A stretch of 64,000 nt of DNA from Botryllus schlosseri (GCA_051294905.1 CM119384.1:6138001-6202000), one strand, 5' to 3'; positions 540 through 57,963 are shown, counted from the stretch's first letter. Notes: generated by a model from the sequence alone, not told the origin. A program made the numbers and translations.

Positions 540-3347
540 CTCTAGATCCACCAACCGTGACGCACAGGCAAGTCGGCGGCATAGTATCGATCGAGTGGCG
601 GCCCGTGCCGGGAGCCTCGCGATACAAAGTCCAGTCCTTCGATTCCGACGGGAAAATTCTACAAGACGTCTCGTTTCGAGCCACCGAATCCGAACAAACA
701 TTTTACCAACCGTACGCTACCAGCTACGGATACACCGTGACGGTCACCGCAGAGTCGGACGAAAGCATAAACTCAACAGCCACTGTGGTTATCTCGCCGC
801 ACACGAGCCCGTCAGGTACAACCCAGTCAACTAAACAGTCGCACGCCAACACTGAACATCCCACGTCCACCGCAACAACGGAAGTAACTCCCCCGACACC
901 TATGTTTAAAGCGCGGCCTGTTTTACTCGTTGTAACGAGCACACCGGACGATAGCGCGCGCGTTGAGGAATCGGACAGCAGCCCGGCTCCCGAATACATG
1001 GCGAATAAGGACGACGCGTCAGGTAGCGGTGTACGATGTCGGTGGTGAACCGGGCGTGATAGCTTGATGCATGTATCACGCAGCTGCGTTTCCTTGTACA
1101 GTTTCATCCATCTCGCACGTTCGATTATTTTGCCGCTACGCGTGCTGATGTCAAGGGTGGTTTACGGTGTCAGTGTCTCTGCGGCGTGGATCAGCTGATT
1201 TAAAATTTTCGAATCCAAATCCTGCGTATCGGACTTGACATTTAAGTCCAAGTTCAAATTCAGAATTGGTTTGATATCGTATCCTAATCCAATTGCGCGT
1301 CCGTTAATGCCAGAAGTTGGTGCAAGAGTGGCAAGAATATTGAAAATTATTAAAAAATTCCATGTCCAATTCAAATCCGACTTCAAAATAGTAGGAAATC
1401 CATAGTCAAATCCATAGTCCATTGTTAAATCCTGGAAAAATTATCAAATCCGTTTTTTCTACGTGGACGTGCGTTTCCGGCGACGTATTTTTGAATGATA
1501 AATTTTACTATTACGGTTCGTCATGGCCTACTGTTTTATTAGGCCATGGGGGCGTGTGGGCATAACCGAATGAAATTCGCTTGATTTTGCGGGAAACGGG
1601 TTTCGGGTTCTTTCAAGACCGTTGCATAATCTAGTCAAGTTTGAATAGAGACTGGTCGTAAATCATCGCCTCTGCCTTAAGGTATTAAAATATGATCCAC
1701 GTTTACTCCAGCTCTGCTGTTTATTGGTCATTTTTATGACCAGATTGTTATTGTATTTATGACGGAATCCCCCCTTATGAGACTCAACACGCCGCGAGTT
1801 TTGGAATAATATCGCTTTTGAGGCATAATGCCACTTAAGCAAGCCTGTTTCCGCCGCGTTATGATTATCGCGACCGCATTGCGATCTTCATGCGTGCTCG
1901 CCGCAATAGACTGTTGACCTCATCAGATCCGATACGGTAGCGCGATGGAAGAGTACTACAACTATTTAAATGCGCAGCGCAGTAAACCTATGACATCATA
2001 AACATAAACACTGACGCAAAACTGGCAAATAACGTTCTGCCACACTTCAAAATTTGACAGTCCGTCATCTCTTTCCTACATTATTTATCACAGTGGCGTC
2101 GGTATGACGTCAGAATTACTTTAATCCTGTGTTTGCCCGCACTTCCTGGAACTCCAGACATTGCGATACCGGCACGGATGGATTTGCTCCGTGATCGTAA
2201 CCATTTTCGTTGCCTGCCGTACACTTGTCCAACTTCTACGTCATTCCTTCCTCTATTCTTCCGTAATAATGAGTCATGCACGATTTCCCTCTTCACACAC
2301 ATCTCACTTCACTGTAATCGCTTCTATGATTAGATGGTGTACTTGGTGATCGACGTCATTGAATCTCTATCGCCCGCGCTCACTGATGATTTCTTTTGTT
2401 TTACAGATATTTTCGACATGCGGAACCAGTCTGTCGGTGTCACGATCGGGCTCCTTGTCTTCGTGTTTTTATTTATTTTAACTTTTTCTATTATCGTCTA
2501 CAATTTTTTCGTAATAAGGTCTGCGAAAAGTAAACTCAAAGGTAAGTGTCGTATTTCCTTAGATCCTATAGTGAATTTTCATGTTGGTCCTGAGCATCGC
2601 ACGATTTATGTGCCGTCCGACTGTTGTTCGGTAGTAGGCTGTGTGCCAGTTTATGGGTGTTATCATTCCGAAACATCACAAGATTGTTCACACGACGTTA
2701 AAGTGCCAAAACCGACTAGTAAAGTCACAAATGTGTATCATGCACGCGGTGTGCTATTCCAATGCGGAAAAGTGGTGACTCCTACTCAAGATCAAATGAC
2801 GAATATATATTTCAGATAACGAAGACTATGAATATATACTAAAATGGCTTGTACTGTGGAAGAAGAAAGACAAGCGATGCAATTCACCTTGTCTTAAATT
2901 TGGTAAGTCTCCGCATAAGAGTCGATGTTGTCGTTATTAATATTAATACTCATGGTCGGTAAAGTATATAAGGCATTATATTTTTGCTTGTAAAATAATC
3001 TTAATCATTGTGAAAGTCGTATATTTTCGCTACTCGAAAACATCGACTCTGACCACTCGACTCGAATCATTACAATTGACACTTAAGTCGGATTCGAGCA
3101 ACCTCGTTGTGCCCTCAACACTCATTGCTGTTGTTACGGAACCTATCAATGCATGGGATTGAGAGACAATTTTATCATAACTGTGAGAATTTCGTGACAA
3201 TTTCGTGACGCAGCAATGTTTCAACCAGACCTTCGGGGTTGTACGCCTTCCCTCCACGCCTCGAGCAAAGCTTCACGGCGACTCTATACTTATCTTCGTT
3301 ATCTTGTATTTACAGATGGTGCGGTGAATACGTCATCAAATGCATAA
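540..3347 (+). CDS. 3' part of a type I membrane protein: FN3 domain, Ser/Thr/Pro-rich stalk, TM helix, short cytoplasmic tail. Exons ~540-1022, 2407-2541, 2816-2902, 3316-3347; 5' exons are outside the window.
   Basis: All junctions are phase-1 AG/GT. The first exon gives LDPP..SIEWRPVPGASRYKVQ..YGYTVTVTA (FN3 W/Y/Y pattern) then an S/T/P-rich stretch. The second gives VGVTIGLLVFVFLFILTFSIIVYNFFVI followed by RSAKSKLK. The later exons give DNEDYEYILKW... and a TAA at 3345-3347. An alternative phase-1 donor exists at 816. Confidence 0.7.
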
Positions 3348-46010: not shown

Positions 46011-46799
46011 AAATATAATGGTAAAGTAACCAGAGGGATGTGCAGATCGGGTTTGATTCGTCAAGCGAAATATATTAGGTTATGTCTTAGTAATAGTTGA
46101 ATCACCATAATCAACCCTTAAAATATTATCATTCTAGGTTTGTTTCAGGCCAATGCTTTGATTTGATTTCATGAAAATACTACGTGTGGCGTTTGAGATT
46201 TACAGATCATGGTCGATATTTCGAAAATGGTGATCCATTGGATTCATGCTGTCGTGAGTATATTAGTTGGTAATTTTTACTTTGAGGGCCAAATCGTTGA
46301 GGGCTAACTTCACCCTGGTTGCTAATGCAGTATACTATAGTATATATATCGCAGCCAGACTCTGAACAGTGGTTGTGTTCGGCAATAAGTCATGAGTCTT
46401 TCTTGCATAGAATTAATCGAATAGAAAGCAGTGTGTGACAGGTGACATCGCTACCATGCATTTCACTCTTGAGCAGACAGAAAGTTCTTACGAAAAAGTA
46501 AAAAGTATACTGTTGGCATGAGTTTGCATCACTTTTATTACTGAAATTGCCTTAGAAACCGAGGGATGTACCTATAAATACTGATTGATGACCGCGTTGA
46601 TTATAATTTACATCTATATTTGAGGCTATCATTGTATCATATATTATAGTCATTCTAGATTTGTCAGATCAATCTTGCTATTTAGAATGGTGCATTTGAC
46701 TAGCAAACAGGTGAAATCTGGCTCTACTCTATACTTATTCAAACAAACAAGTTGAGTATTGACATCAGTAATTTTACTTTTTTTGAGCAGCAATATATA

Positions 46800-47252
46800 C
46801 ACTACAAAAAAAAATTAGACAATTTGGTCTCAAAATTAGACAAATTTGGTCTCAAATTTAAGAAATGAGGTTGATTTGGTCTCATTTTACCACCCACTCA
46901 CCATAAATGCTATTTTCGACTCAGACAACCATATATATATTGATCTGAATGGTATACGTGAGTAGTAAGTGGCATGTACCTTGATAACTATATCTAGTGA
47001 ATACCTTGTAAACTTAGTACAGGATCATCTCAACACTGCAATTTCTGGTCTCTCTCATCCTTCCCCTCCTCCGCTCAGACCCCTAACATTGAAAAGGATG
47101 CCCCCAAGGCACTGCTACCATTTTCGATCAATTTCTGGCTTACTTTTGAGACATAAAGTACTTGGTAAGACTAATTTGTCTTTAAGACTTTTTCTGCTAA
47201 AAAATCGATTTGAGACATTGAGACCAAACTTGTCTAATTTTTTTTTGTAGTG
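46800..47252. mobile_element. CACTA/EnSpm MITE copy 1 (453 bp)
   Basis: Ends cactacaaaaaaaaattagacaa / ttgtctaatttttttttgtagtg; subterminal ttggtctca repeats; TA on both sides. Confidence 0.88.
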
Positions 47253-47689
47253 TATAGCTCGAAGCTAAAACCCGTCCACGAACTCCGGACCGTCAAAAAT
47301 CCAGTTTCTATATGCGCAAATGAATTTATTGAATTCACGGGACTGTGATGGAAATATACATATTGAAACTGATATTATACGAGAAAAACAAATTGTTTTT
47401 AACATAAATACCCGCTTGAACCTTTCTCTATAGGAAATGATCATGAATTCTAGGAAAAAGGTAATGCAGAGGCGTCCAGGTCCGCTAATCTAATTGACGA
47501 ACCTACGGGGCTCGTTCACTTTCGGACCAAAAATCAATTTTCTCCATAAGGATGTAGTAGAATTGGTCCTCAAGTGAACGAGCCCCGTCCCGGTCCGTAT
47601 TGGGGCGCGTGTAGTCGCGTTTGTCGCGGGCGGACAGGGGTATCGGCGGTTGTTTTTGTTGTATTTCTGCGTATTCGGGTCGGATTCCG

Positions 47690-48450
47690 TCGCATATTTT
47701 GTTTGTGATTTTTTGCCGAGAACATATTAAAAAATTAATAAAAATGTTCGTGGTATCAGAGGATTTACTCAGATATCTACACCATCGAATGTTTACATTC
47801 GATATAGAAGCACTGTTGGAGCTCAAAAACTACCCATGCTTTCCAAATGAAAACCTGATTTTCAGTGCTGACATAAATGTATCACCGGCCCATCTGCATC
47901 CAGAGGCCTGCCCTTCTCTTTTCAAAGCCTGAATCTGATCCTTGTTGAAAAAACCTTCCTATCCTCCTCCATCTGTTCCTTGTTATCCGAGCTTACATCC
48001 AAGTTCCAAAACGATCATAAATTGTGCAATTCCGCTATTAATCACATTCGGGTATCTTGTATGGTTTTCATTGTGTATTTGTATCGTCAAAATGCTACAA
48101 TTAATTTCACAATGATTTCGCATTACCAGCGATTTCAACCGCGCGCGCAATTTCTTCGTCTTTCTCCCTGAATTTCTTTGCACTGTATTCCGTGGCACAC
48201 AAGACCTAAACAGGTGATAAGGGCCACTCTATAAACTTTTAATCATAATAATAACGCGCAATTTCTTCATCTTTCTCCTGACACCGGCCTTGTAGCTGCA
48301 AATTGTAAGATGGGTGACTTTATATCGTATTGGGTGGTCTATCCTGTTACAGTATGTATGCGGCAAGTTTCTATTGGCCATATTGAATCTTACTAGCTCC
48401 ATCTCCTGCTTCAACAGGATACAATTCTCACAAGAAGCCTTTAGGTTGAG
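47690..48450 (-). pseudogene. Decayed P-element/THAP9-like transposase N-terminal fragment (second copy at 51874-52634)
   Basis: Broken frames give CENCILLKQEMELV (coiled coil), KKLRARLKSL and FFNKDQIQALKREGQASGCRWAGDTFMSALKIRFSFGKHG*. This resembles the 'DQ..L....rW..et...AL.lrf..G..GY' motif that precedes the P-transposase core. Frameshifts and stops are present. Confidence 0.55.
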
Positions 48451-48816
48451 ATTCTAAATATATCGCCATATGTAGGCCTACAATTCGTTGATGCAGCCCA
48501 GAAATGCATTTTGCTGTGGTAGTCCGGGGTGATCTGAAATAAAAACGACCAGCAGACAACGAAAATACATAAATTCACCTTGGTTTCTATGTCCAATATA
48601 CCAGTTGCGGGCGTAATCCCATAAATATCACTGCCAATATGAACGAAAACTACAGCCTCACACATAGGTTCAGGCTGTTTTTGTGGTCTTTTGAGACCAA
48701 AATGGATGCCGCAACGTAACAGTGGCATGACGCAACAATGACCTCGCACTTCTTGCCCTTCTACATTCTTTGGGCGCAACCATTCCGTATACTTTTTCGC
48801 TCTTCATTTTCGCCTT

Positions 48817-48895
48817 TGGTGGGAGGGATTCGAGCCCCGGCGCGGCGTGGCGGCGAGGCAAGCACAGTGCTTATACCCATTAGGCCACGACGCCC
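48817..48895 (-). other. tRNA-like Pol III head, possibly a SINE or tRNA pseudogene (second copy at 53001-53079)
   Basis: Minus strand gggcgtcg-TGGCCTAATGG-(39 nt)-GGGCTCGAATCC-ctcccacca, giving an A-box and a near B-box at tRNA spacing. No clean cloverleaf. Confidence 0.4.
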
Positions 48896-49109
48896 TCGAG
48901 AGCGGGAGACGATACGCGGCAATTCGAGTTCGCACGCTCGCGTCATCCGCTGGAGGTCTCTCGCATAATCCCGCGGTTCCCGCCGTCCGCGAGCGGGCTC
49001 GTAGTTTGGGGCCGGGCGAACACAATGGCACGGGCACTCAAAAATGAACAGAGTAACAATTTTAAAGATTCTAATCGTGTAGTGATACATGATTTCTTAG
49101 CGTACTGAA

Positions 49110-49840
49110 ATTAGACGATCCTGTCGAAGTTACATTATGGCATCCACTGTTGGGGGGCTGCCAGTAAAACTGCACTCAAGCCACTGCAGAAACTACAGCA
49201 TAAAGTGCTCCGAATCATAGCTAGGGCCCCAAAGGGGCCTGGCTGCTCATCCAATAAGTCGCTGCTGAAGAGATTCGGCGTCCTAAACATAGAAGATATG
49301 CGGAAACTAGAAATCGCCAAGTTTATGTATCAGTTTCACTGCGGTCGTTGCCCCGAATATCTCAGTGACTTCTTTACCTCTGAATCAAAAGCGCACAAGT
49401 ACAACACACGCGCGTCCACGTCGTCCAAATATCATATGATCGACCGAAAAGATCATCGCTCCATCAAATATGCCGGACCTGATGTGTGGAACAGTATCCC
49501 GCCGGCCATCCGACAGTCGACGAGCATGTCCACATTCAAGTCGAAATACAAGCAATTACTACTAAATAAATACAGTCCATCCTCAAGATTACCGGACCAC
49601 GACTGACCTATCGATCTCGCTTCCCATGACATGCCGCCCTATTTCTTGTCGCTTTCTTTTTCTATACTGTATTCTTTACTTTCATTCAGTGTGCATGCCT
49701 CCTCTTTACTACGCCTAGGCCAAGGTGGGTGTCCGATTCCATTGACAAATCCAAGTCGCTTCGACATCTTCCTGTCTATTCATTGTATCGCATTTTTTGT
49801 GGTGTATTGAACTGATAAAATTGCTAATAAACCAATGATG
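49110..49840 (+). mobile_element. 5'-truncated CR1/L2-group LINE tail (second copy at 53294-54024)
   Basis: LHYGIHCWGAASKTALKPLQKLQHKVLRII..HKYNTR..SIKYAGPDVWNSIPPAIRQSTSMSTFKSKYKQLLL is the typical post-RT C-terminus. The 3' UTR ends in aataaa. Confidence 0.85.
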
Positions 49841-50983
49841 ATGTCGCTAAGAGTTAATTTATAGTTTCGAAGTAATTTCCCAACGCGTTGCGGCATACGA
49901 AGCGGGGTGCGTCATTGTATATGAGATATCTGTGAAGTCGTGGTCGAGCCGCGGCAACAGTGACAATGGATGCGCAATAGGACTGTTGAAAAATAACCTT
50001 TATTTCTGAATCTTGCTGGTTACGTGATTAAATCGATAAAACGACGTACACCAGATTCGAATTCATTCTAACCAATATTCGCGGATTTAGTACAGCATGA
50101 AAATTTTGAATTCCAAGCATTTTGAATTCCAAGCCGTAGAAGTGGAGTGATTTCAATTTTTCTTTGATAAATCTTTGATAATTCCGGGATTATCCTTGAT
50201 CGGTGGATCACCCCAGAATTATCATCAAAAATGCGCAATTAAACGGGTACGCTCGAAAAATATACCTGTCCTGTCGCAATTACATTTAATCCGATGCGAA
50301 ACTGACATTTTATTCGCTGTGGCCACTCTACATGTGTAATTTGTATACATTTCAACTTTCCACGCCGTTCTCATTGATAATCGAACACTCGACACGACTC
50401 GAAGCCCAATACACATTGTCGTCTACTTATGACCCGTCGTTTCTAAAAGCTTATCGCTCTTTCAATTTAGAGTCCCAATTTCCAGCGCGGCGCTCGACGC
50501 TCAGGCTATCGCTCTCCCCCGTGGCGAGCGAGGGCCGATCAAAATGGGCTTTTGCCGCGTTGTAGTACTGGTTGGCGACGTGGCAGAACCGGGCTGCGGT
50601 CATCGCCTGAACAGGTCTGAACTGCCCCTCAGACGATCGCGGGTCAGATGGGGCTGCGGGTCTTGCTAGCTCCGCGAAACGCGGCTTTAGGAAGTAGAAG
50701 TGTTAATTTTGCACAGCTCGATCGAGCCGCCCCGCCGTCGAAAACCGGTCGTTTACGCAGCCGTCTCGCGCGGATCCGGAACTTGCGCGCCGGTCAACGC
50801 GCGAACACGTTCCGCCCCGCGAACCGATTCGGATCGGTCGGCCACTTCCGGGGTCGGCGCCACGGCCCGGGTCACGACGAACACTAGCACAGAAAGCCGT
50901 GCCCCGACCGGCGTCGGCCGTCGCCGAGAGCTTCATCGTTTCGTTCGCGTCTGCTCGTTCGGCAGTCGTTGGTTATATACGTA

Positions 50984-51436
50984 CACTACAAAAAAAAATT
51001 AGACAATTTGGTCTCAAAATTAGACAAATTTGGTCTCAAATTTAAGAAATGAGGTTGATTTGGTCTCATTTTACCACCCACTCACCATAAATGCTATTTT
51101 CGACTCAGACAACCATATATATATTGATCTGAATGGTATACGTGAGTAGTAAGTGGCATGTACCTTGATAACTATATCTAGTGAATACCTTGTAAACTTA
51201 GTACAGGATCATCTCAACACTGCAATTTCTGGTCTCTCTCATCCTTCCCCTCCTCCGCTCAGACCCCTAACATTGAAAAGGATGCCCCCAAGGCACTGCT
51301 ACCATTTTCGATCAATTTCTGGCTTACTTTTGAGACATAAAGTACTTGGTAAGACTAATTTGTCTTTAAGACTTTTTCTGCTAAAAAATCGATTTGAGAC
51401 ATTGAGACCAAACTTGTCTAATTTTTTTTTGTAGTG
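50984..51436. mobile_element. CACTA/EnSpm MITE copy 2
   Basis: Appears identical to 46800-47252; flanked by TA on both sides. Confidence 0.88.
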
Positions 51437-54400
51437 TATAGCTCGAAGCTAAAACCCGTCCACGAACTCCGGACCGTCAAAAATCCAGTTTCTATATGCG
51501 CAAATGAATTTATTGAATTCACGGGACTGTGATGGAAATATACATATTGAAACTGATATTATACGAGAAAAACAAATTGTTTTTAACATAAATACCCGCT
51601 TGAACCTTTCTCTATAGGAAATGATCATGAATTCTAGGAAAAAGGTAATGCAGAGGTGTCCAGGTCCGCTAATCTAATTGACGAACCTACGGGGCTCGTT
51701 CACTTTCGGACCAAAAATCAATTTTCTCCATAAGGATGTAGTAGAATTGGTCCTCAAGTGAACGAGCCCCGTCCCGGTCCGTATTGGGGCGCGTGTAGTC
51801 GCGTTTGTCGCGGGCGGACAGGGGTATCGGCGGTTGTTTTTGTTGTATTTCTGCGTATTCGGGTCGGATTCCGTCGCATATTTTGTTTGTGATTTTTTGC
51901 CGAGAACATATTAAAAAATTAATAAAAATGTTCGTGGTATCAGAGGATTTACTCAGATATCTACACCATCGAATGTTTACATTCGATATAGAAGCACTGT
52001 TGGAGCTCAAAAACTACCCATGCTTTCCAAATGAAAACCTGATTTTCAGTGCTGACATAAATGTATCACCGGCCCATCTGCATCCAGAGGCCTGCCCTTC
52101 TCTTTTCAAAGCCTGAATCTGATCCTTGTTGAAAAAACCTTCCTATCCTCCTCCATCTGTTCCTTGTTATCCGAGCTTACATCCAAGTTCCAAAACGATC
52201 ATAAATTGTGCAATTCCGCTATTAATCACATTCGGGTATCTTGTATGGTTTTCATTGTGTATTTGTATCGTCAAAATGCTACAATTAATTTCACAATGAT
52301 TTCGCATTACCAGCGATTTCAACCGCGCGCGCAATTTCTTCGTCTTTCTCCCTGAATTTCTTTGCACTGTATTCCGTGGCACACAAGACCTAAACAGGTG
52401 ATAAGGGCCACTCTATAAACTTTTAATCATAATAATAACGCGCAATTTCTTCATCTTTCTCCTGACACCGGCCTTGTAGCTGCAAATTGTAAGATGGGTG
52501 ACTTTATATCGTATTGGGTGGTCTATCCTGTTACAGTATGTATGCGGCAAGTTTCTATTGGCCATATTGAATCTTACTAGCTCCATCTCCTGCTTCAACA
52601 GGATACAATTCTCACAAGAAGCCTTTAGGTTGAGATTCTAAATATATCGCCATATGTAGGCCTACAATTCGTTGATGCAGCCCAGAAATGCATTTTGCTG
52701 TGGTAGTCCGGGGTGATCTGAAATAAAAACGACCAGCAGACAACGAAAATACATAAATTCACCTTGGTTTCTATGTCCAATATACCAGTTGCGGGCGTAA
52801 TCCCATAAATATCACTGCCAATATGAACGAAAACTACAGCCTCACACATAGGTTCAGGCTGTTTTTGTGGTCTTTTGAGACCAAAATGGATGCCGCAACG
52901 TAACAGTGGCATGACGCAACAATGACCTCGCACTTCTTGCCCTTCTACATTCTTTGGGCGCAACCATTCCGTATACTTTTTCGCTCTTCATTTTCGCCTT
53001 TGGTGGGAGGGATTCGAGCCCCGGCGCGGCGTGGCGGCGAGGCAAGCACAGTGCTTATACCCATTAGGCCACGACGCCCTCGAGAGCGGGAGACGATACG
53101 CGGCAATTCGAGTTCGCACGCTCGCGTCATCCGCTGGAGGTCTCTCGCATAATCCCGCGGTTCCCGCCGTCCGCGAGCGGGCTCGTAGTTTGGGGCCGGG
53201 CGAACACAATGGCACGGGCACTCAAAAATGAACAGAGTAACAATTTTAAAGATTCTAATCGTGTAGTGATACATGATTTCTTAGCGTACTGAAATTAGAC
53301 GATCCTGTCGAAGTTACATTATGGCATCCACTGTTGGGGGGCTGCCAGTAAAACTGCACTCAAGCCACTGCAGAAACTACAGCATAAAGTGCTCCGAATC
53401 ATAGCTAGGGCCCCAAAGGGGCCTGGCTGCTCATCCAATAAGTCGCTGCTGAAGAGATTCGGCGTCCTAAACATAGAAGATATGCGGAAACTAGAAATCG
53501 CCAAGTTTATGTATCAGTTTCACTGCGGTCGTTGCCCCGAATATCTCAGTGACTTCTTTACCTCTGAATCAAAAGCGCACAAGTACAACACACGCGCGTC
53601 CACGTCGTCCAAATATCATATGATCGACCGAAAAGATCATCGCTCCATCAAATATGCCGGACCTGATGTGTGGAACAGTATCCCGCCGGCCATCCGACAG
53701 TCGACGAGCATGTCCACATTCAAGTCGAAATACAAGCAATTACTACTAAATAAATACAGTCCATCCTCAAGATTACCGGACCACGACTGACCTATCGATC
53801 TCGCTTCCCATGACATGCCGCCCTATTTCTTGTCGCTTTCTTTTTCTATACTGTATTCTTTACTTTCATTCAGTGTGCATGCCTCCTCTTTACTACGCCT
53901 AGGCCAAGGTGGGTGTCCGATTCCATTGACAAATCCAAGTCGCTTCGACATCTTCCTGTCTATTCATTGTATCGCATTTTTTGTGGTGTATTGAACTGAT
54001 AAAATTGCTAATAAACCAATGATGATGTCGCTAAGAGTTAATTTATAGTTTCGAAGTAATTTCCCAACGCGTTGCGGCATACGAAGCGGGGTGCGTCATT
54101 GTATATGAGATATCTGTGAAGTCGTGGTCGAGCCGCGGCAACAGTGACAATGGATGCGCAATAGGACTGTTGAAAAATAACCTTTATTTCTGAATCTTGC
54201 TGGTTACGTGATTAAATCGATAAAACGACGTACACCAGATTCGAATTCATTCTAACCAATATTCGCGGATTTAGTACAGCATGAAAATTTTGAATTCCAA
54301 GCATTTTGAATTCCAAGCCGTAGAAGTGGAGTGATTTCAATTTTTCTTTGATAAATCTTTGATAATTCCGGGATTATCCTTGATCGGTGGATCACCCCAG

Positions 54401-55167
54401 AATTATCATCAAAAATGCGCAATTAAACGGGTACGCTCGAAAAATATACCTGTCCTGTCGCAATTACATTTAATCCGATGCGAAACTGACATTTTATTCG
54501 CTGTGGCCACTCTACATGTGTAATTTGTATACATTTCAACTTTCCACGCCGTTCTCATTGATAATCGAACACTCGACACGACTCGAAGCCCAATACACAT
54601 TGTCGTCTACTTATGACCCGTCGTTTCTAAAAGCTTATCGCTCTTTCAATTTAGAGTCCCAATTTCCAGCGCGGCGCTCGACGCTCAGGCTATCGCTCTC
54701 CCCCGTGGCGAGCGAGGGCCGATCAAAATGGGCTTTTGCCGCGTTGTAGTACTGGTTGGCGACGTGGCAGAACCGGGCTGCGGTCATCGCCTGAACAGGT
54801 CTGAACTGCCCCTCAGACGATCGCGGGTCAGATGGGGCTGCGGGTCTTGCTAGCTCCGCGAAACGCGGCTTTAGGAAGTAGAAGTGTTAATTTTGCACAG
54901 CTCGATCGAGCCGCCCCGCCGTCGAAAACCGGTCGTTTACGCAGCCGTCTCGCGCGGATCCGGAACTTGCGCGCCGGTCAACGCGCGAACACGTTCCGCC
55001 CCGCGAACCGATTCGGATCGGTCGGCCACTTCCGGGGTCGGCGCCACGGCCCGGGTCACGACGAACACTAGCACAGAAAGCCGTGCCCCGACCGGCGTCG
55101 GCCGTCGCCGAGAGCTTCATCGTTTCGTTCGCGTCTGCTCGTTCGGCAGTCGTTGGTTATATACGTA

Positions 55168-55620
55168 CACTACAAAAAAAAATTAGACAATTTGGTCTCA
55201 AAATTAGACAAATTTGGTCTCAAATTTAAGAAATGAGGTTGATTTGGTCTCATTTTACCACCCACTCACCATAAATGCTATTTTCGACTCAGACAACCAT
55301 ATATATATTGATCTGAATGGTATACGTGAGTAGTAAGTGGCATGTACCTTGATAACTATATCTAGTGAATACCTTGTAAACTTAGTACAGGATCATCTCA
55401 ACACTGCAATTTCTGGTCTCTCTCATCCTTCCCCTCCTCCGCTCAGACCCCTAACATTGAAAAGGATGCCCCCAAGGCACTGCTACCATTTTCGATCAAT
55501 TTCTGGCTTACTTTTGAGACATAAAGTACTTGGTAAGACTAATTTGTCTTTAAGACTTTTTCTGCTAAAAAATCGATTTGAGACATTGAGACCAAACTTG
55601 TCTAATTTTTTTTTGTAGTG
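55168..55620. mobile_element. CACTA/EnSpm MITE copy 3
   Basis: Appears identical to copies 1 and 2; followed by ta and unique sequence. Confidence 0.88.
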
Positions 55621-56114
55621 TATATGATACCTCTACTGCAGTTTACTTAAGTATCACCGATGCAATGAGCAATGACTATATACTCATAAATAGTTTCATG
55701 TCCGTGTTACAGAGCCCTTATTTGGAAACTACAAACTCCTATCGATAATGTCACCAACTGTCCTACTTGAGTTACACCAATGTAGGCTACTATTTTGACC
55801 TCGCGAGTAACTATATATATTTTATCATTCTACTTGAGTAGCATCAATGTCGGCAACCATCAGGTCTCTTCCAGGAAATATGTTTCATTCTTCTTCTTGA
55901 GTAGCTGCCAACATTGAGGCTATACTGAAGTAAAATAGTTCGCGACATTGGCAACATTGACTAGATGGATGCACTCATTCGTTTGTTCCCTGACACTTTT
56001 GATTCATTGACTGCAATGCCATTCTTGTTGAACTTGTCTTATTGTGATGATCTTAACGCTGGCGAACCTAGCTCAAAATTTAATATAACCTCATACTGAA
56101 ATGGAAGCTATTAC

Positions 56115-57270
56115 TAGGCTTACCATACGTCCCGTTTTAGGCGGGATTGTCCCGCTTTTTAACTTATTGTCCCGGCGTCCTGACCAGTCAGCCAAACGTC
56201 CCGCTTTTTAAGGCCGTAAGGTACTGCTGAACTAACAAAATTTTCCAATTTTTTTTATTGCAGAATCCTAAAGTATGAAACTAGTTCTTTTCAAAAATGT
56301 ATTGCTTTTGTCTGATTTCGAATTAGAAGTATGTTAAAATACGATTTTAAAATACGATTTGAAATCAACCATTCTCGTAGAAATTCACCCCCCATACAAG
56401 TTCATTGATTTAAACTCACTCAAAATTGTTATAATTCCTCTGCCGTGAGCATTACCGGTATTTGCTACAGAAAAGGAGGGGCTAATACGCCCTACCTATA
56501 TCTTTACCACCCCTGACGACGTGAGATGCTATGGTAGAGTTGCTTTGGACTGAGTCATATTCATGCTACTATATTATTACCCTCTGCTTATACTATAAAT
56601 TATTTTGCTAATCTTATTTCCTTATTATGACTTTACCTTTATACTTTATCTTCCCATAAGAACTCTTTATCCTATGTACTCCCAGATTTTATGTTACATA
56701 ATATCTACCCAAAACACCCATGCTTTGAATTCTTGTCGGTAGGGTCAAGCCCGCCTATGAGAGCTTACGGATGAAGATCCTTTGGCTAAAACACCAGAAT
56801 GTCTTGTTCACTAAATTCCTACCAATATATATATCTTAAATGTATATATTATATCATGTCTTAAATCTGAACAAGAACTGTGGAGGATCCATTGCGGAAA
56901 CTCTGTACTACGCCCTTACGGGCGTAGCTATTAGTTTTTCTCGCTATGCTGCCTTGGGCAGCTTAATATTGTAAAATTCTGATCTGGGCCACGGAACATT
57001 TTCAAATTGGAGGCGGAGTCGCCCAGAAGTTGCATCGATTACCCCATAGTGTGGGCTCAAAATCATTGTTTATTTGGGCGGGAGGGGGCTAAAACATGTG
57101 CTTTCGGTCCCGGTTACACAACACACAGCCGCATACTCCTGAACCGGACCGTGACAACCTCGGGTCTATGAGCAAAGCGTTGCTAGTGTGACGTCATAAT
57201 CCAATTTGAAATCCACTAGTGGGCGCTAAAAAGTGTCCCGAATTTGGGTTGCTGAAATATGGTAACCCTA
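56115..57270. mobile_element. Non-autonomous hAT (Ac-type) element
   Basis: Ends taggcttaccata / tatggtaacccta; perfect 8-bp TSD gctattac. Confidence 0.87.
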
Positions 57271-57963
57271 GCTATTACGAATATTTACACTGATTCCTAA
57301 ATATCACTGGCTCGCATCATTTTCTATCCGGTCTTTGCATACCTTGTTTACCTATCTCATGCCATCTCAACAGTTGCACTTGCGCGGCATATTCATAATT
57401 CCCCAAGCCTCCCGAACCATTCTGTCCAATTAGCACTATATGTTTTGCTGGATAAGTCGGGTCAATGTTATATTGCAAACACACACTGCAAGTGATGAGT
57501 CCATTAGTTCTGAGTTAGCTGCAATTGTCACTGTAAATGTAAAGACACTTATTATGGCAATGACATGTACTTGTTGATTGTCCCTTGTCTTATGACATTG
57601 ATCATCAAATTATCATTAACTGGCAATCGATATCCACATATCATAACGAATCATTCATTTCTTGTATACACAGTATCCAACATTTTTTGCTCAAATTCTC
57701 ATAATAGTAATTCACTGAGAAATATATATAAATATTGAAATAAACCCGTATATTTTCAGTTGACACTCTGCATGGATAATCGTCAGCAACCATAGTGAAG
57801 CATTGAAAAAAACATTGTGTATCACCAATCACAGCGCCAAATATGTAAAATTGATATCTTTGATTCTACAGTTGATACTACGTCTAGGCATGAGAATTTT
57901 ATAACGAATGGTCCAGGCCATTGATGTGGAGAAATTTCTCAAGTTCCCCGAATAGTTTTGTAT

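What the first reader, a model, noticed from the sequence alone, without database searches (positions are those of the whole stretch)
46800..55620. Bacterial-style composite transposon in an animal: three CACTA MITEs bracketing two copies of a 3.7-kb cargo
Seen: three direct 453-bp CACTA MITEs separated by two near-identical 3731-bp cores (2x4184+453=8821). The outer ends sit in one TA site (caatata-TA-tatgat). The middle MITE also has its own TA duplication, joining core end to core start (tatacg-TA-tagctc). Inference: the MITE first inserted into a circle or tandem array of the core. The outermost ends of non-adjacent MITEs were then mobilised together, moving 8.8 kb of unrelated DNA. Unequal crossover between two MITEs is an alternative source of the doubling. 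Either way a non-coding MITE pair acts as a cargo vehicle.
Basis: partly seen in the sequence, partly recalled or inferred. Interest (0 to 1): 0.76.

Follow-up and report, generated by a model that had tools for sequence, protein, structure and literature searches.

The report
Two-unit composite-like DNA transposon, non-coding
The 8.8-kb block is a real, very young two-unit copy of a non-coding jumping element built like a bacterial composite transposon, but this architecture (terminal direct repeats that are themselves small inverted-repeat elements, plus solo copies and tandem multimers) was already described in animals in 2022, so this is a new variant and not a new kind.

Summary
Three identical 453-bp inverted-repeat elements (46800-47252, 50984-51436, 55168-55620) separate two 3,731-bp cores that differ at one base, and the whole sits in a TA (or TATA) duplication.

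The genome shows this is not a one-off:
- The one-unit form (repeat-core-repeat, 4,637 bp) lies at 6 or more other loci at 99.8-100% identity.
- Their flanks are unrelated, and each copy has its own 2-bp target duplication (TA five times, TT once).
- Older subfamilies, solo repeats (TA, CA, TG) and arrays of at least 7 and 13 units also exist.
- The 7-unit array begins and ends with the repeat and sits in one TT duplication.

The unit therefore does move as a whole, and multimers most likely grow in place by exchange between the terminal repeats.

The two terminal repeats of each copy carry no substitutions between them. Lineages differ by 3-10% in the repeat but only 0.3-1.1% in the core.

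The architecture matches KolobokP (Kojima & Bao 2022). The end and duplication signature does not: CAC..GTG ends and 2 bp, which is CACTA/EnSpm-like. No autonomous partner was found. Reads could not test one unit against two.

The parts
46798..46799 (.). Left copy of the target-site duplication (TA; TATA is also possible because the site is TA-rich)
46800..47252 (+). Terminal direct repeat 1. It is a complete 453-bp MITE with CACTAC...GTAGTG ends, 23-nt perfect inverted repeats (34 of 35 nt with one indel) and subterminal TTAGACAA/TTTGGTCTCAA repeats
   Evidence: identical to repeats 2 and 3
47253..50983 (+). Internal region (core) 1, 3,731 bp and non-coding. It starts and ends with TA and is identical to the family master sequence (same as loci L033 and L037)
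49122..49841 (+). About 720-bp high-copy insertion inside core 1, probably a 5'-truncated LINE fragment (133-aa tail ORF at 49205-49606, (ATG)3 tail). It is absent from older family members
   Evidence: older copies join core 1874 to 2590; joint 53305->54026 in the equivalent part of core 2, plus a large depth peak. The LINE assignment is inferred: Pfam and the Atlas gave nothing
50984..51436 (+). Terminal direct repeat 2, the shared middle copy
51437..55167 (+). Internal region (core) 2. It differs from core 1 only at 51657 (T, where all other family copies have C)
   Evidence: The T was not seen in contigs of any run
55168..55620 (+). Terminal direct repeat 3
55621..55622 (.). Right copy of the target-site duplication (TA)
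   Evidence: In run X17 a single-copy contig matches the right flank up to exactly 55621 and then continues about 1 kb without being laid on the repeat

Best explanation
The block is a two-unit multimer of a non-autonomous, non-coding cut-and-paste DNA transposon family with a composite-like build. Two 453-bp terminal direct repeats, each a complete MITE with its own CACTA-type inverted ends, flank a 3.7-kb internal region of junk DNA that includes a probable LINE fragment.

The standard form is the 4,637-bp monomer. A transposase supplied in trans (not identified; the CAC..GTG ends and 2-bp duplication point to the CACTA/EnSpm-Mirage-Chapaev group) uses the left end of the first repeat and the right end of the second. 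It inserts the whole unit with a 2-bp, TA-preferring target duplication.

After insertion, the direct repeats recombine. Unequal sister-chromatid exchange, or break repair between them, adds units (two here, at least 7 and at least 13 elsewhere) or removes them (solo repeats). The same exchange keeps the two repeats of a copy identical. Single repeats can also excise on their own.

Shown: the structure; the dispersed copies with their own duplications; multimers inside one duplication; concerted evolution of the repeats; the non-coding cargo.

Inferred: the transposase type; that the doubling at this locus happened in place; the recombination route.
For: - Structure.
- Six monomers at 99.8-100% identity lie on five other chromosomes with unrelated flanks. 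Their duplications are TA five times and TT once.
- Older subfamilies also carry TA duplications.
- Solo repeats have TA, CA and TG duplications. All six non-TA cases (TT twice, CA twice, TG twice) match on both sides, so the 2 bp are a true duplication.
- The C1 array of at least 7 units starts and ends with the repeat and lies in one TT duplication. Contig C84 is at least 13 units of the same array type.
- Core 1 equals the master sequence and core 2 has one private base. All other young copies are monomers.
- The repeats within a copy show 0 substitutions in every lineage. Between lineages they differ by 14-46 of 453 in a mosaic pattern, while cores differ by only 12-42 of about 3,700.
- There is evidence that single repeats excise or hop locally: copies lacking the right repeat keep both flanking dinucleotides (L037, L044, L050); L044 has an identical repeat 503 bp upstream; L042 is rearranged.
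- No ORF, Pfam or Rfam signal was found in the cargo.
- Literature: the same architecture and behaviour in KolobokP (PMC9587614); 2-bp duplications with CAC..GTG ends in a tunicate CACTA element (PMC6004678); macrotransposons in maize (PMC9910405).
Against: - No autonomous partner or transposase was linked to these ends. PF02992 gave no hit, and the one weak DUF4218 ORF, on another contig, has no such ends within its 3.2-kb locus.
- No read-level proof exists that two units and not one lie here. The T at 51657 was not seen in any run's contigs, although contigs drop rare variants.
- The empty site was seen only indirectly, through one contig of another individual whose overhang sequence was not shown. 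It is absent from the assembly.
- Sequence alone cannot separate in-place doubling from transposition of a two-unit donor, or from re-integration of a repeat-plus-core circle.
- Two asymmetries are not explained by this model. The core-end/right-repeat junction varies (TA, TAT, CA, TATA, TTT) while the left junction never does. Copies lacking the right repeat (at least 6) outnumber those lacking the left (1).
Confidence: 0.62

Rival explanations
1. The MITE first landed in a circular or tandemly repeated core. The transposase then took the outermost ends of non-adjacent MITEs and moved the 8.8-kb two-unit piece into this TA site in one step.
For: Arrays of the family exist and would offer such donors. 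Any left end/right end pair in an array is formally a valid substrate. One duplication flanks the whole block.
Against: No MITE-free core-to-core junction exists in the assembly at up to 3 mismatches. The arrays seen belong to an older subtype (period 4,124, repeat 96% identical), not the young subtype found here. The C1 array itself sits in one TT duplication, so it is derived from an insertion. All six other young copies are monomers. Core 2 has a private base.
Confidence: 0.13
2. The doubling came from a 4,184-bp circle (one repeat plus one core) that was popped out by repeat-repeat recombination. It re-integrated into a repeat of a resident monomer, as a 'translocatable unit' analogous to IS26, instead of arising by unequal sister-chromatid exchange.
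For: This route gives the same product inside an unchanged target duplication, and it was proposed for KolobokP. Solo repeats, the expected by-product of circle release, exist. A unit of left repeat plus core is the commonest partial form.
Against: No circle junction or extrachromosomal DNA data were available. Integration into repeats of another subfamily should give chimeric, unequal repeats, yet 0 substitutions separate the repeats in every copy examined.
Confidence: 0.12
3. Assembly artefact: only one unit exists here, and the assembler duplicated it, for instance from two haplotypes.
For: The three repeats are identical and the cores differ at a single base. That base (T at 51657) was not seen in contigs of any run, including the likely source sample.
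Against: Tandem multimers of this family are assembled elsewhere with unique flanks and one duplication, so the form is natural. Contigs drop rare variants, so the missing T is weak evidence (tool note). An 8.8-kb structure is within the reach of ordinary long reads.
Confidence: 0.1
4. It is a non-autonomous LTR-type retroelement (LARD/TRIM-like) in the known tandem LTR-internal-LTR-internal-LTR form.
For: It has direct terminal repeats, solo repeats and tandem multimers, and the repeats within a copy are identical.
Against: The repeats have 23-34-nt inverted ends of the CAC..GTG type and not TG..CA. The duplication is 2 bp and not 4-6 bp. There is no purine tract before the right repeat and no tRNA-like primer site after the left one. 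Single repeats excise and re-insert nearby.
Confidence: 0.02

Closest known systems
KolobokP composite-like DNA transposons (Kojima & Bao 2022, Mob DNA 13:24; PMC9587614)
   Same: Both have long terminal direct repeats of about 450 bp that carry their own short inverted ends, and an internal region between them. Both show abundant solo repeats and multimers of the form (repeat-internal)n-repeat inside one target duplication. Both have partial forms lacking one repeat, with a marked left/right asymmetry, and both include non-autonomous families. The paper proposes unequal crossover or a repeat-plus-internal circle as the source of multimers.
   Different: KolobokP ends are 5'-RR..YY-3' with 3-5-bp duplications; here the ends are CAC..GTG with 2 bp. 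Autonomous KolobokP elements encode a Kolobok transposase and a His-Me nuclease; here the internal region is non-coding junk and no autonomous relative was found. Among chordates, KolobokP was reported only from amphioxus, whereas this host is a sea squirt according to earlier notes.
Ac/Ds macrotransposons of maize (Huang & Dooner 2008; Wang et al. 2022; cited in PMC9910405)
   Same: Two elements in direct orientation act through their outermost ends and move the DNA between them. The whole unit is flanked by one target duplication and can excise and re-insert.
   Different: Those are hAT elements with 8-bp duplications, seen as single experimental or rare natural events. Here the composite has become a repeat family with more than 20 loci, several subfamilies and arrays.
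Bacterial composite transposons and IS26 pseudo-compound transposons
   Same: Flanking elements bracket passenger DNA. IS26 structures have direct orientation, tandem amplification and a one-element-plus-cargo circle.
   Different: Bacterial flanking IS elements encode the transposase and the cargo is usually a selected gene. Here the flanking elements are non-coding and the cargo has no gene.
CACTA/EnSpm-Mirage-Chapaev (CMC) MITEs, e.g. the tunicate element ENS1_Cis
   Same: CAC..GTG ends and a 2-bp target duplication (PMC6004678; PMC4079192; PMC12730594).
   Different: Ordinary CMC MITEs are single units. Paired direct copies moving cargo as a family are not described in the papers read here for this group.
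Tandem dimers of transposons as seeds of satellites (McGurk & Barbash 2018, PMC5932611)
   Same: A small tandem transposon-derived structure expands by unequal exchange into arrays (title and abstract only).
   Different: There the dimers arise by double insertion of a whole element at one site. Here the repeat unit is one terminal repeat plus cargo, and the first duplication needs only the two terminal repeats.

Membership tests
Composite-like DNA transposon with long terminal direct repeats (architecture defined by KolobokP) | Internal region flanked by two long direct repeats that each carry their own terminal inverted repeats | tested here: met
   453-bp repeats with 23-34-nt inverted ends flank a 3,731-bp internal region, here and at 6 or more other loci
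Composite-like DNA transposon with long terminal direct repeats (architecture defined by KolobokP) | Solo repeats and (repeat-internal)n-repeat multimers, each inside one target duplication | tested here: met
   Solo repeats have TA, CA or TG duplications. The window holds n=2 in TA. C1 holds n of at least 7 in TT
KolobokP (Kolobok superfamily) | Termini 5'-RR...YY-3' | tested here: not met
   Termini are CACTAC...GTAGTG. The boundaries are fixed by copies with non-TA duplications
KolobokP (Kolobok superfamily) | Target duplication of 3-5 bp | tested here: not met
   The duplication is 2 bp at all 20 insertions examined: TA 14, TT 2, CA 2, TG 2
KolobokP (Kolobok superfamily) | [quoted passage not shown] | tested here: inconclusive
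   The internal region has no ORF over 133 aa and no Pfam hit. No autonomous relative was found, but the genome could not be searched exhaustively because the search and sequence-retrieval limits were reached
CMC (CACTA/EnSpm-Mirage-Chapaev) non-autonomous element | 5'-CAC...GTG-3' termini | tested here: met
CMC (CACTA/EnSpm-Mirage-Chapaev) non-autonomous element | Short target duplication of 2-4 bp (2 bp in a tunicate EnSpm element) | tested here: met
   2 bp. Compared with PMC6004678 and PMC12730594
CMC (CACTA/EnSpm-Mirage-Chapaev) non-autonomous element | Mobilised by a CMC transposase whose own element shares these ends | tested here: inconclusive
   PF02992 gave no hit. PF13960 gave one weak hit, a 607-aa ORF on C123, with no matching ends in its 3.2-kb locus
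Tc1/mariner MITE | Strict TA target duplication | tested here: not met
   TT, CA and TG duplications occur
LTR retrotransposon derivative (LARD/TRIM) | TG..CA repeat ends, 4-6-bp duplication, primer-binding site and polypurine tract | tested here: not met
   CAC..GTG ends, a 2-bp duplication, and internal ends that read TATAGCTCG... and ...TATATACGTA
Bacterial-type composite transposon | Flanking elements are insertion sequences that encode the transposase | tested here: not met
   The flanking 453-bp elements have no credible ORF and no Pfam hit

The most novel reading that the evidence does not exclude
The repeat-internal-repeat composite architecture, so far tied to one Kolobok lineage and to its homing-type nuclease, has arisen independently in a CACTA/EnSpm-like family of a tunicate. 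There it sustains itself with no coding capacity at all. On this reading, paired MITEs plus ordinary repeat-repeat recombination are enough to give amplification, multimer growth and concerted evolution of the terminal repeats.
Probability: 0.4. Interest if true: 0.55.

Novelty: new variant of a known kind. Interest (0 to 1): 0.42.

Why it matters
It shows that two copies of a tiny non-coding transposon can turn 3.7 kb of junk DNA into a successful mobile family, with more than 20 loci, several subfamilies and very recent copies. That family then seeds 4-kb-period tandem arrays.

It is also a natural comparison for KolobokP, where multimer formation was tentatively ascribed to an element-encoded nuclease. 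If no such nuclease acts here, ordinary recombination between the terminal repeats suffices.

For genome annotation, such units are easily mislabelled as LTR elements or segmental duplications.

Tried and rejected
- MITE-free core-to-core junctions, in both the young and the old form: none at up to 3 mismatches.
- A donor locus where the right repeat is followed by the continuation of a repeat that shares the core's last 14 nt: none. That similarity is only 14-16 nt and may be chance, since the reversed-pattern control gave 87 hits against 136 real hits. It is not used as evidence.
- The empty site in the assembly: none.
- An autonomous partner: PF02992 gave nothing and PF13960 gave one unlinked weak hit. 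Earlier notes mention CACTG-ended EnSpm elements in this genome, but these could not be tied to these ends.
- Reads: only k-mer contigs were available, so spanning and depth tests for one unit against two were impossible.
- Cargo annotation: Rfam, Pfam and the Atlas gave no hits. An exact-protein look-up of a core ORF was not on record.
- Considered and rejected: a Tc1/mariner assignment (non-TA duplications), an LTR-type element (ends, duplication length, no primer site or purine tract), and segmental duplication (unrelated flanks).
- A Helitron-like reading of the core was considered from its ends and dropped, because it has no TC...CTRR ends.
Full report
**1. The observation**

The window holds three copies of a 453-bp element at 46800-47252, 50984-51436 and 55168-55620. 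They are identical to each other. Between them lie two 3,731-bp cores that differ at one base, 47473 C versus 51657 T.

Each element begins CACTAC and ends GTAGTG. Its inverted ends are 23 nt perfect, or 34 of 35 nt with one indel, and it has repeated TTAGACAA/TTTGGTCTCAA motifs just inside the ends. The whole 8,821-bp block is flanked by TA; TATA is equally possible in this TA-rich site. All inner junctions also read TA. In a tandem repeat of one unit that follows automatically, so it is not independent evidence of a separate insertion.

**2. What the rest of the genome shows**

The window is C14:6138001-6202000 of a 495-Mb assembly. Earlier notes of this scan call the animal a sea squirt; I did not test that.

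The one-unit form (repeat-core-repeat, 4,637 bp) occurs at six other loci on C2, C9, C10 and C12 (three loci):
- The repeats are 100% identical and the cores 99.8-100% identical.
- Their 1-kb flanks are unrelated to each other and to the window.
- Each copy has its own 2-bp duplication: TA five times and TT once.

Solo repeats at 99.6-100% identity carry TA, TA, CA and TG. Older subfamilies have the repeat at 92-97% identity, the core at about 98-99.6%, and 210 extra bp after the left repeat. They sit at further loci, again with TA.

Across the 20 insertions examined the duplication is TA 14 times, TT twice, CA twice and TG twice. The six non-TA cases all match on both sides, which chance would give at about (1/16)^6. 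So this is a true 2-bp, TA-preferring target duplication. The unit is mobile as a whole.

The ends appear about 300 times in the genome, which corresponds to roughly 150 elements.

**3. Multimers and their direction of origin**

C1:36983946-37008210 holds at least 7 units and contig C84 (54 kb) is entirely at least 13 units. Both have a 4,124-bp period.

The C1 array begins and ends with the repeat, and its outer flanks read ...ctacTT[repeat ... repeat]TTgttg.... A whole array inside one TT duplication is what an inserted unit that later grew in place would leave.

No core-to-core junction without the repeat exists in the assembly, in either the young or the old form. I therefore read arrays as products of inserted units and not as the substrate the MITE first invaded.

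At the window, core 1 is identical to the family master (the same as L033 and L037). Core 2 carries one private base, and all other young copies are monomers. The simplest history is a monomer insertion followed by one unequal exchange or break-repair event between its two repeats. Transposition of a two-unit donor, or re-integration of a repeat-plus-core circle, gives the same product and cannot be excluded from sequence alone.

**4. Behaviour of the terminal repeats**

Within every copy examined the two repeats show 0 substitutions. This holds for the young copies, L043, L045, L046, both arrays, and the two repeats of L044.

Between lineages the repeats differ by 14-46 of 453 positions (3-10%), and the differences are mosaic. 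For example, L043 equals the young type for about 390 nt and then switches to the 3' end of another MITE subfamily, in both of its repeats. Cores of the same lineages differ by only 12-42 of about 3,700 positions (0.3-1.1%).

My reading is inference: the repeats exchange sequence with the many dispersed MITEs of other subfamilies, and the two repeats of a copy are homogenised by the same recombination that makes solos and multimers.

**5. Single-repeat events**

At least six copies lack the right repeat but keep both flanking dinucleotides. Examples are L050 (TG[left repeat-core...cgTA]TG), L037 and L044. L044 has an identical repeat 503 bp upstream with its own TA, which looks like a local hop. 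Only one copy lacks the left repeat (L042); it has two repeats head to head at the other end.

The left repeat/core junction never varies. The core/right repeat junction reads TA, TAT, CA, TATA or TTT in different copies. I cannot explain this asymmetry. A similar unexplained asymmetry (40 against 6) and one-sided footprints are reported for a KolobokP family.

**6. The cargo**

The core has no ORF above 133 aa and no Pfam or Rfam match.

Its segment 49122-49841 (53306-54025 in core 2) is missing from older family members and from contigs of other animals. It is extremely abundant in reads, ends in (ATG)3, and contains the 133-aa ORF. I take it as a 5'-truncated LINE fragment. That assignment rests on the shape of the ORF tail, which I know from CR1/L2-type elements, and no database hit backs it.

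**7. Reads**

Only k-mer contigs of public runs were on offer, so spanning and depth tests were impossible.

Laid on 51437-57400, the family is present in all four runs, including one labelled as another organism. The T at 51657 was not seen in any run, but contigs drop rare variants.

This suggests an allele without the insertion in another animal. The overhang sequence was not shown, so this is not proof.

**8. Comparison with what is known**

- **KolobokP.** Kojima & Bao (2022, PMC9587614) described KolobokP in seven animal phyla. It has an internal region between two long terminal direct repeats of about 450 or about 660 bp that carry their own inverted ends. It shows many solo repeats, multimers (repeat-internal)n-repeat inside one duplication, excision of single repeats with left/right asymmetry, and non-autonomous families. 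They propose unequal crossover or a repeat-plus-internal circle as the source of multimers. The present family matches that architecture point for point, even in repeat length.
- **Where it fails as a Kolobok member.** It fails the Kolobok end and duplication signature: RR..YY ends and 3-5 bp for KolobokP, against CAC..GTG ends and 2 bp here.
- **CMC signature.** That signature fits the CACTA/EnSpm-Mirage-Chapaev group. A tunicate EnSpm element with 2-bp duplications is on record (PMC6004678).
- **Other analogues.** Maize Ac macrotransposons show that the outer ends of two directly oriented elements can move the DNA between them.
- **Classification.** I file this as a composite-like transposon of the KolobokP kind by architecture. 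I do not file it as a member of Kolobok. It is provisionally CMC-like, pending the transposase.

**9. Limits**

The autonomous partner was not found. As a result, the other inverted-end pairs (1.1-1.8 kb apart) and several older copies were not inspected.

**10. Verdict**

However, the origin story is not supported, the doubling is most likely local, and the kind is already described in animals.

The new points are the different end and duplication signature, the tunicate host, the wholly non-coding cargo, and the clear concerted evolution of the terminal repeats.

Noticed in passing
window 56115-57270: A 1.16-kb insertion with TAGG(C/G)TTACCATA inverted ends and an 8-bp duplication (GCTATTAC), which is hAT-like. 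It is skipped (56105->57270) by contigs of three runs, including the likely source sample, so it is polymorphic or heterozygous.
   Followed up: partly
L032 (C12:16121573-16126210), L045, L046, C1/C84 arrays: The junction between the core end and the right repeat varies (TA, TTT, TAT, CA, TATA), while the left repeat/core junction is invariant in all copies. In L032 the odd TTT junction matches the TT target duplication of that copy. No explanation was found.
   Followed up: partly
L037, L044, L050; C1:6080778; C12:2143272; C1:39031788: Copies lacking the right repeat but keeping both flanking dinucleotides (at least 6) far outnumber copies lacking the left repeat (1, L042). This parallels an unexplained asymmetry reported for KolobokP-4N1_CorFlu.
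   Followed up: partly
L042 (C10:26072000-26080500): A rearranged copy. The left repeat is missing, and a second, inverted repeat abuts the right repeat head to head with no spacer, forming a perfect palindrome centre. The whole is flanked by CA...CA.
   Followed up: partly
L044 (C7:13195500-13202500): An extra repeat, identical to the left repeat, lies 503 bp upstream with its own TA duplication, while the right repeat is missing. This looks like a local hop of the right repeat.
   Followed up: partly
G000 contig C84 (54 kb) and C1:36983946-37008210: C84 consists only of the 4,124-bp-period array, with repeats identical to those of the C1 array. It may be an unplaced part of the same array, so the true array may be much longer than assembled.
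   Followed up: no
many loci, e.g. C1:22568936/22570633 and C2:40473138/40474746: An abundant repeat containing GTTGGTTATTTACGTTGACGCAAAATTAATTGTA often occurs as direct pairs about 1.6 kb apart. It shares 13-14 nt with the core's last bases, which may be chance.
   Followed up: no
L051 (C123:19480-22638), ORF 1156-2979 minus strand: A 607-aa open frame with a weak DUF4218 match, a domain known from CACTA-type transposases. The family's inverted ends are absent from the 3.2 kb fetched.
   Followed up: partly
C17:1726792 and C1:6080778: The core-end junction and the flank are identical over 34 nt on two contigs. This may be a haplotig or a segmental duplicate.
   Followed up: no
window 51542 and other sites, table 3: At several core positions nearly all read contigs carry a base different from the young copies of the assembly. 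Most family copies in the reads therefore seem to belong to the older, array-type variants.
   Followed up: no
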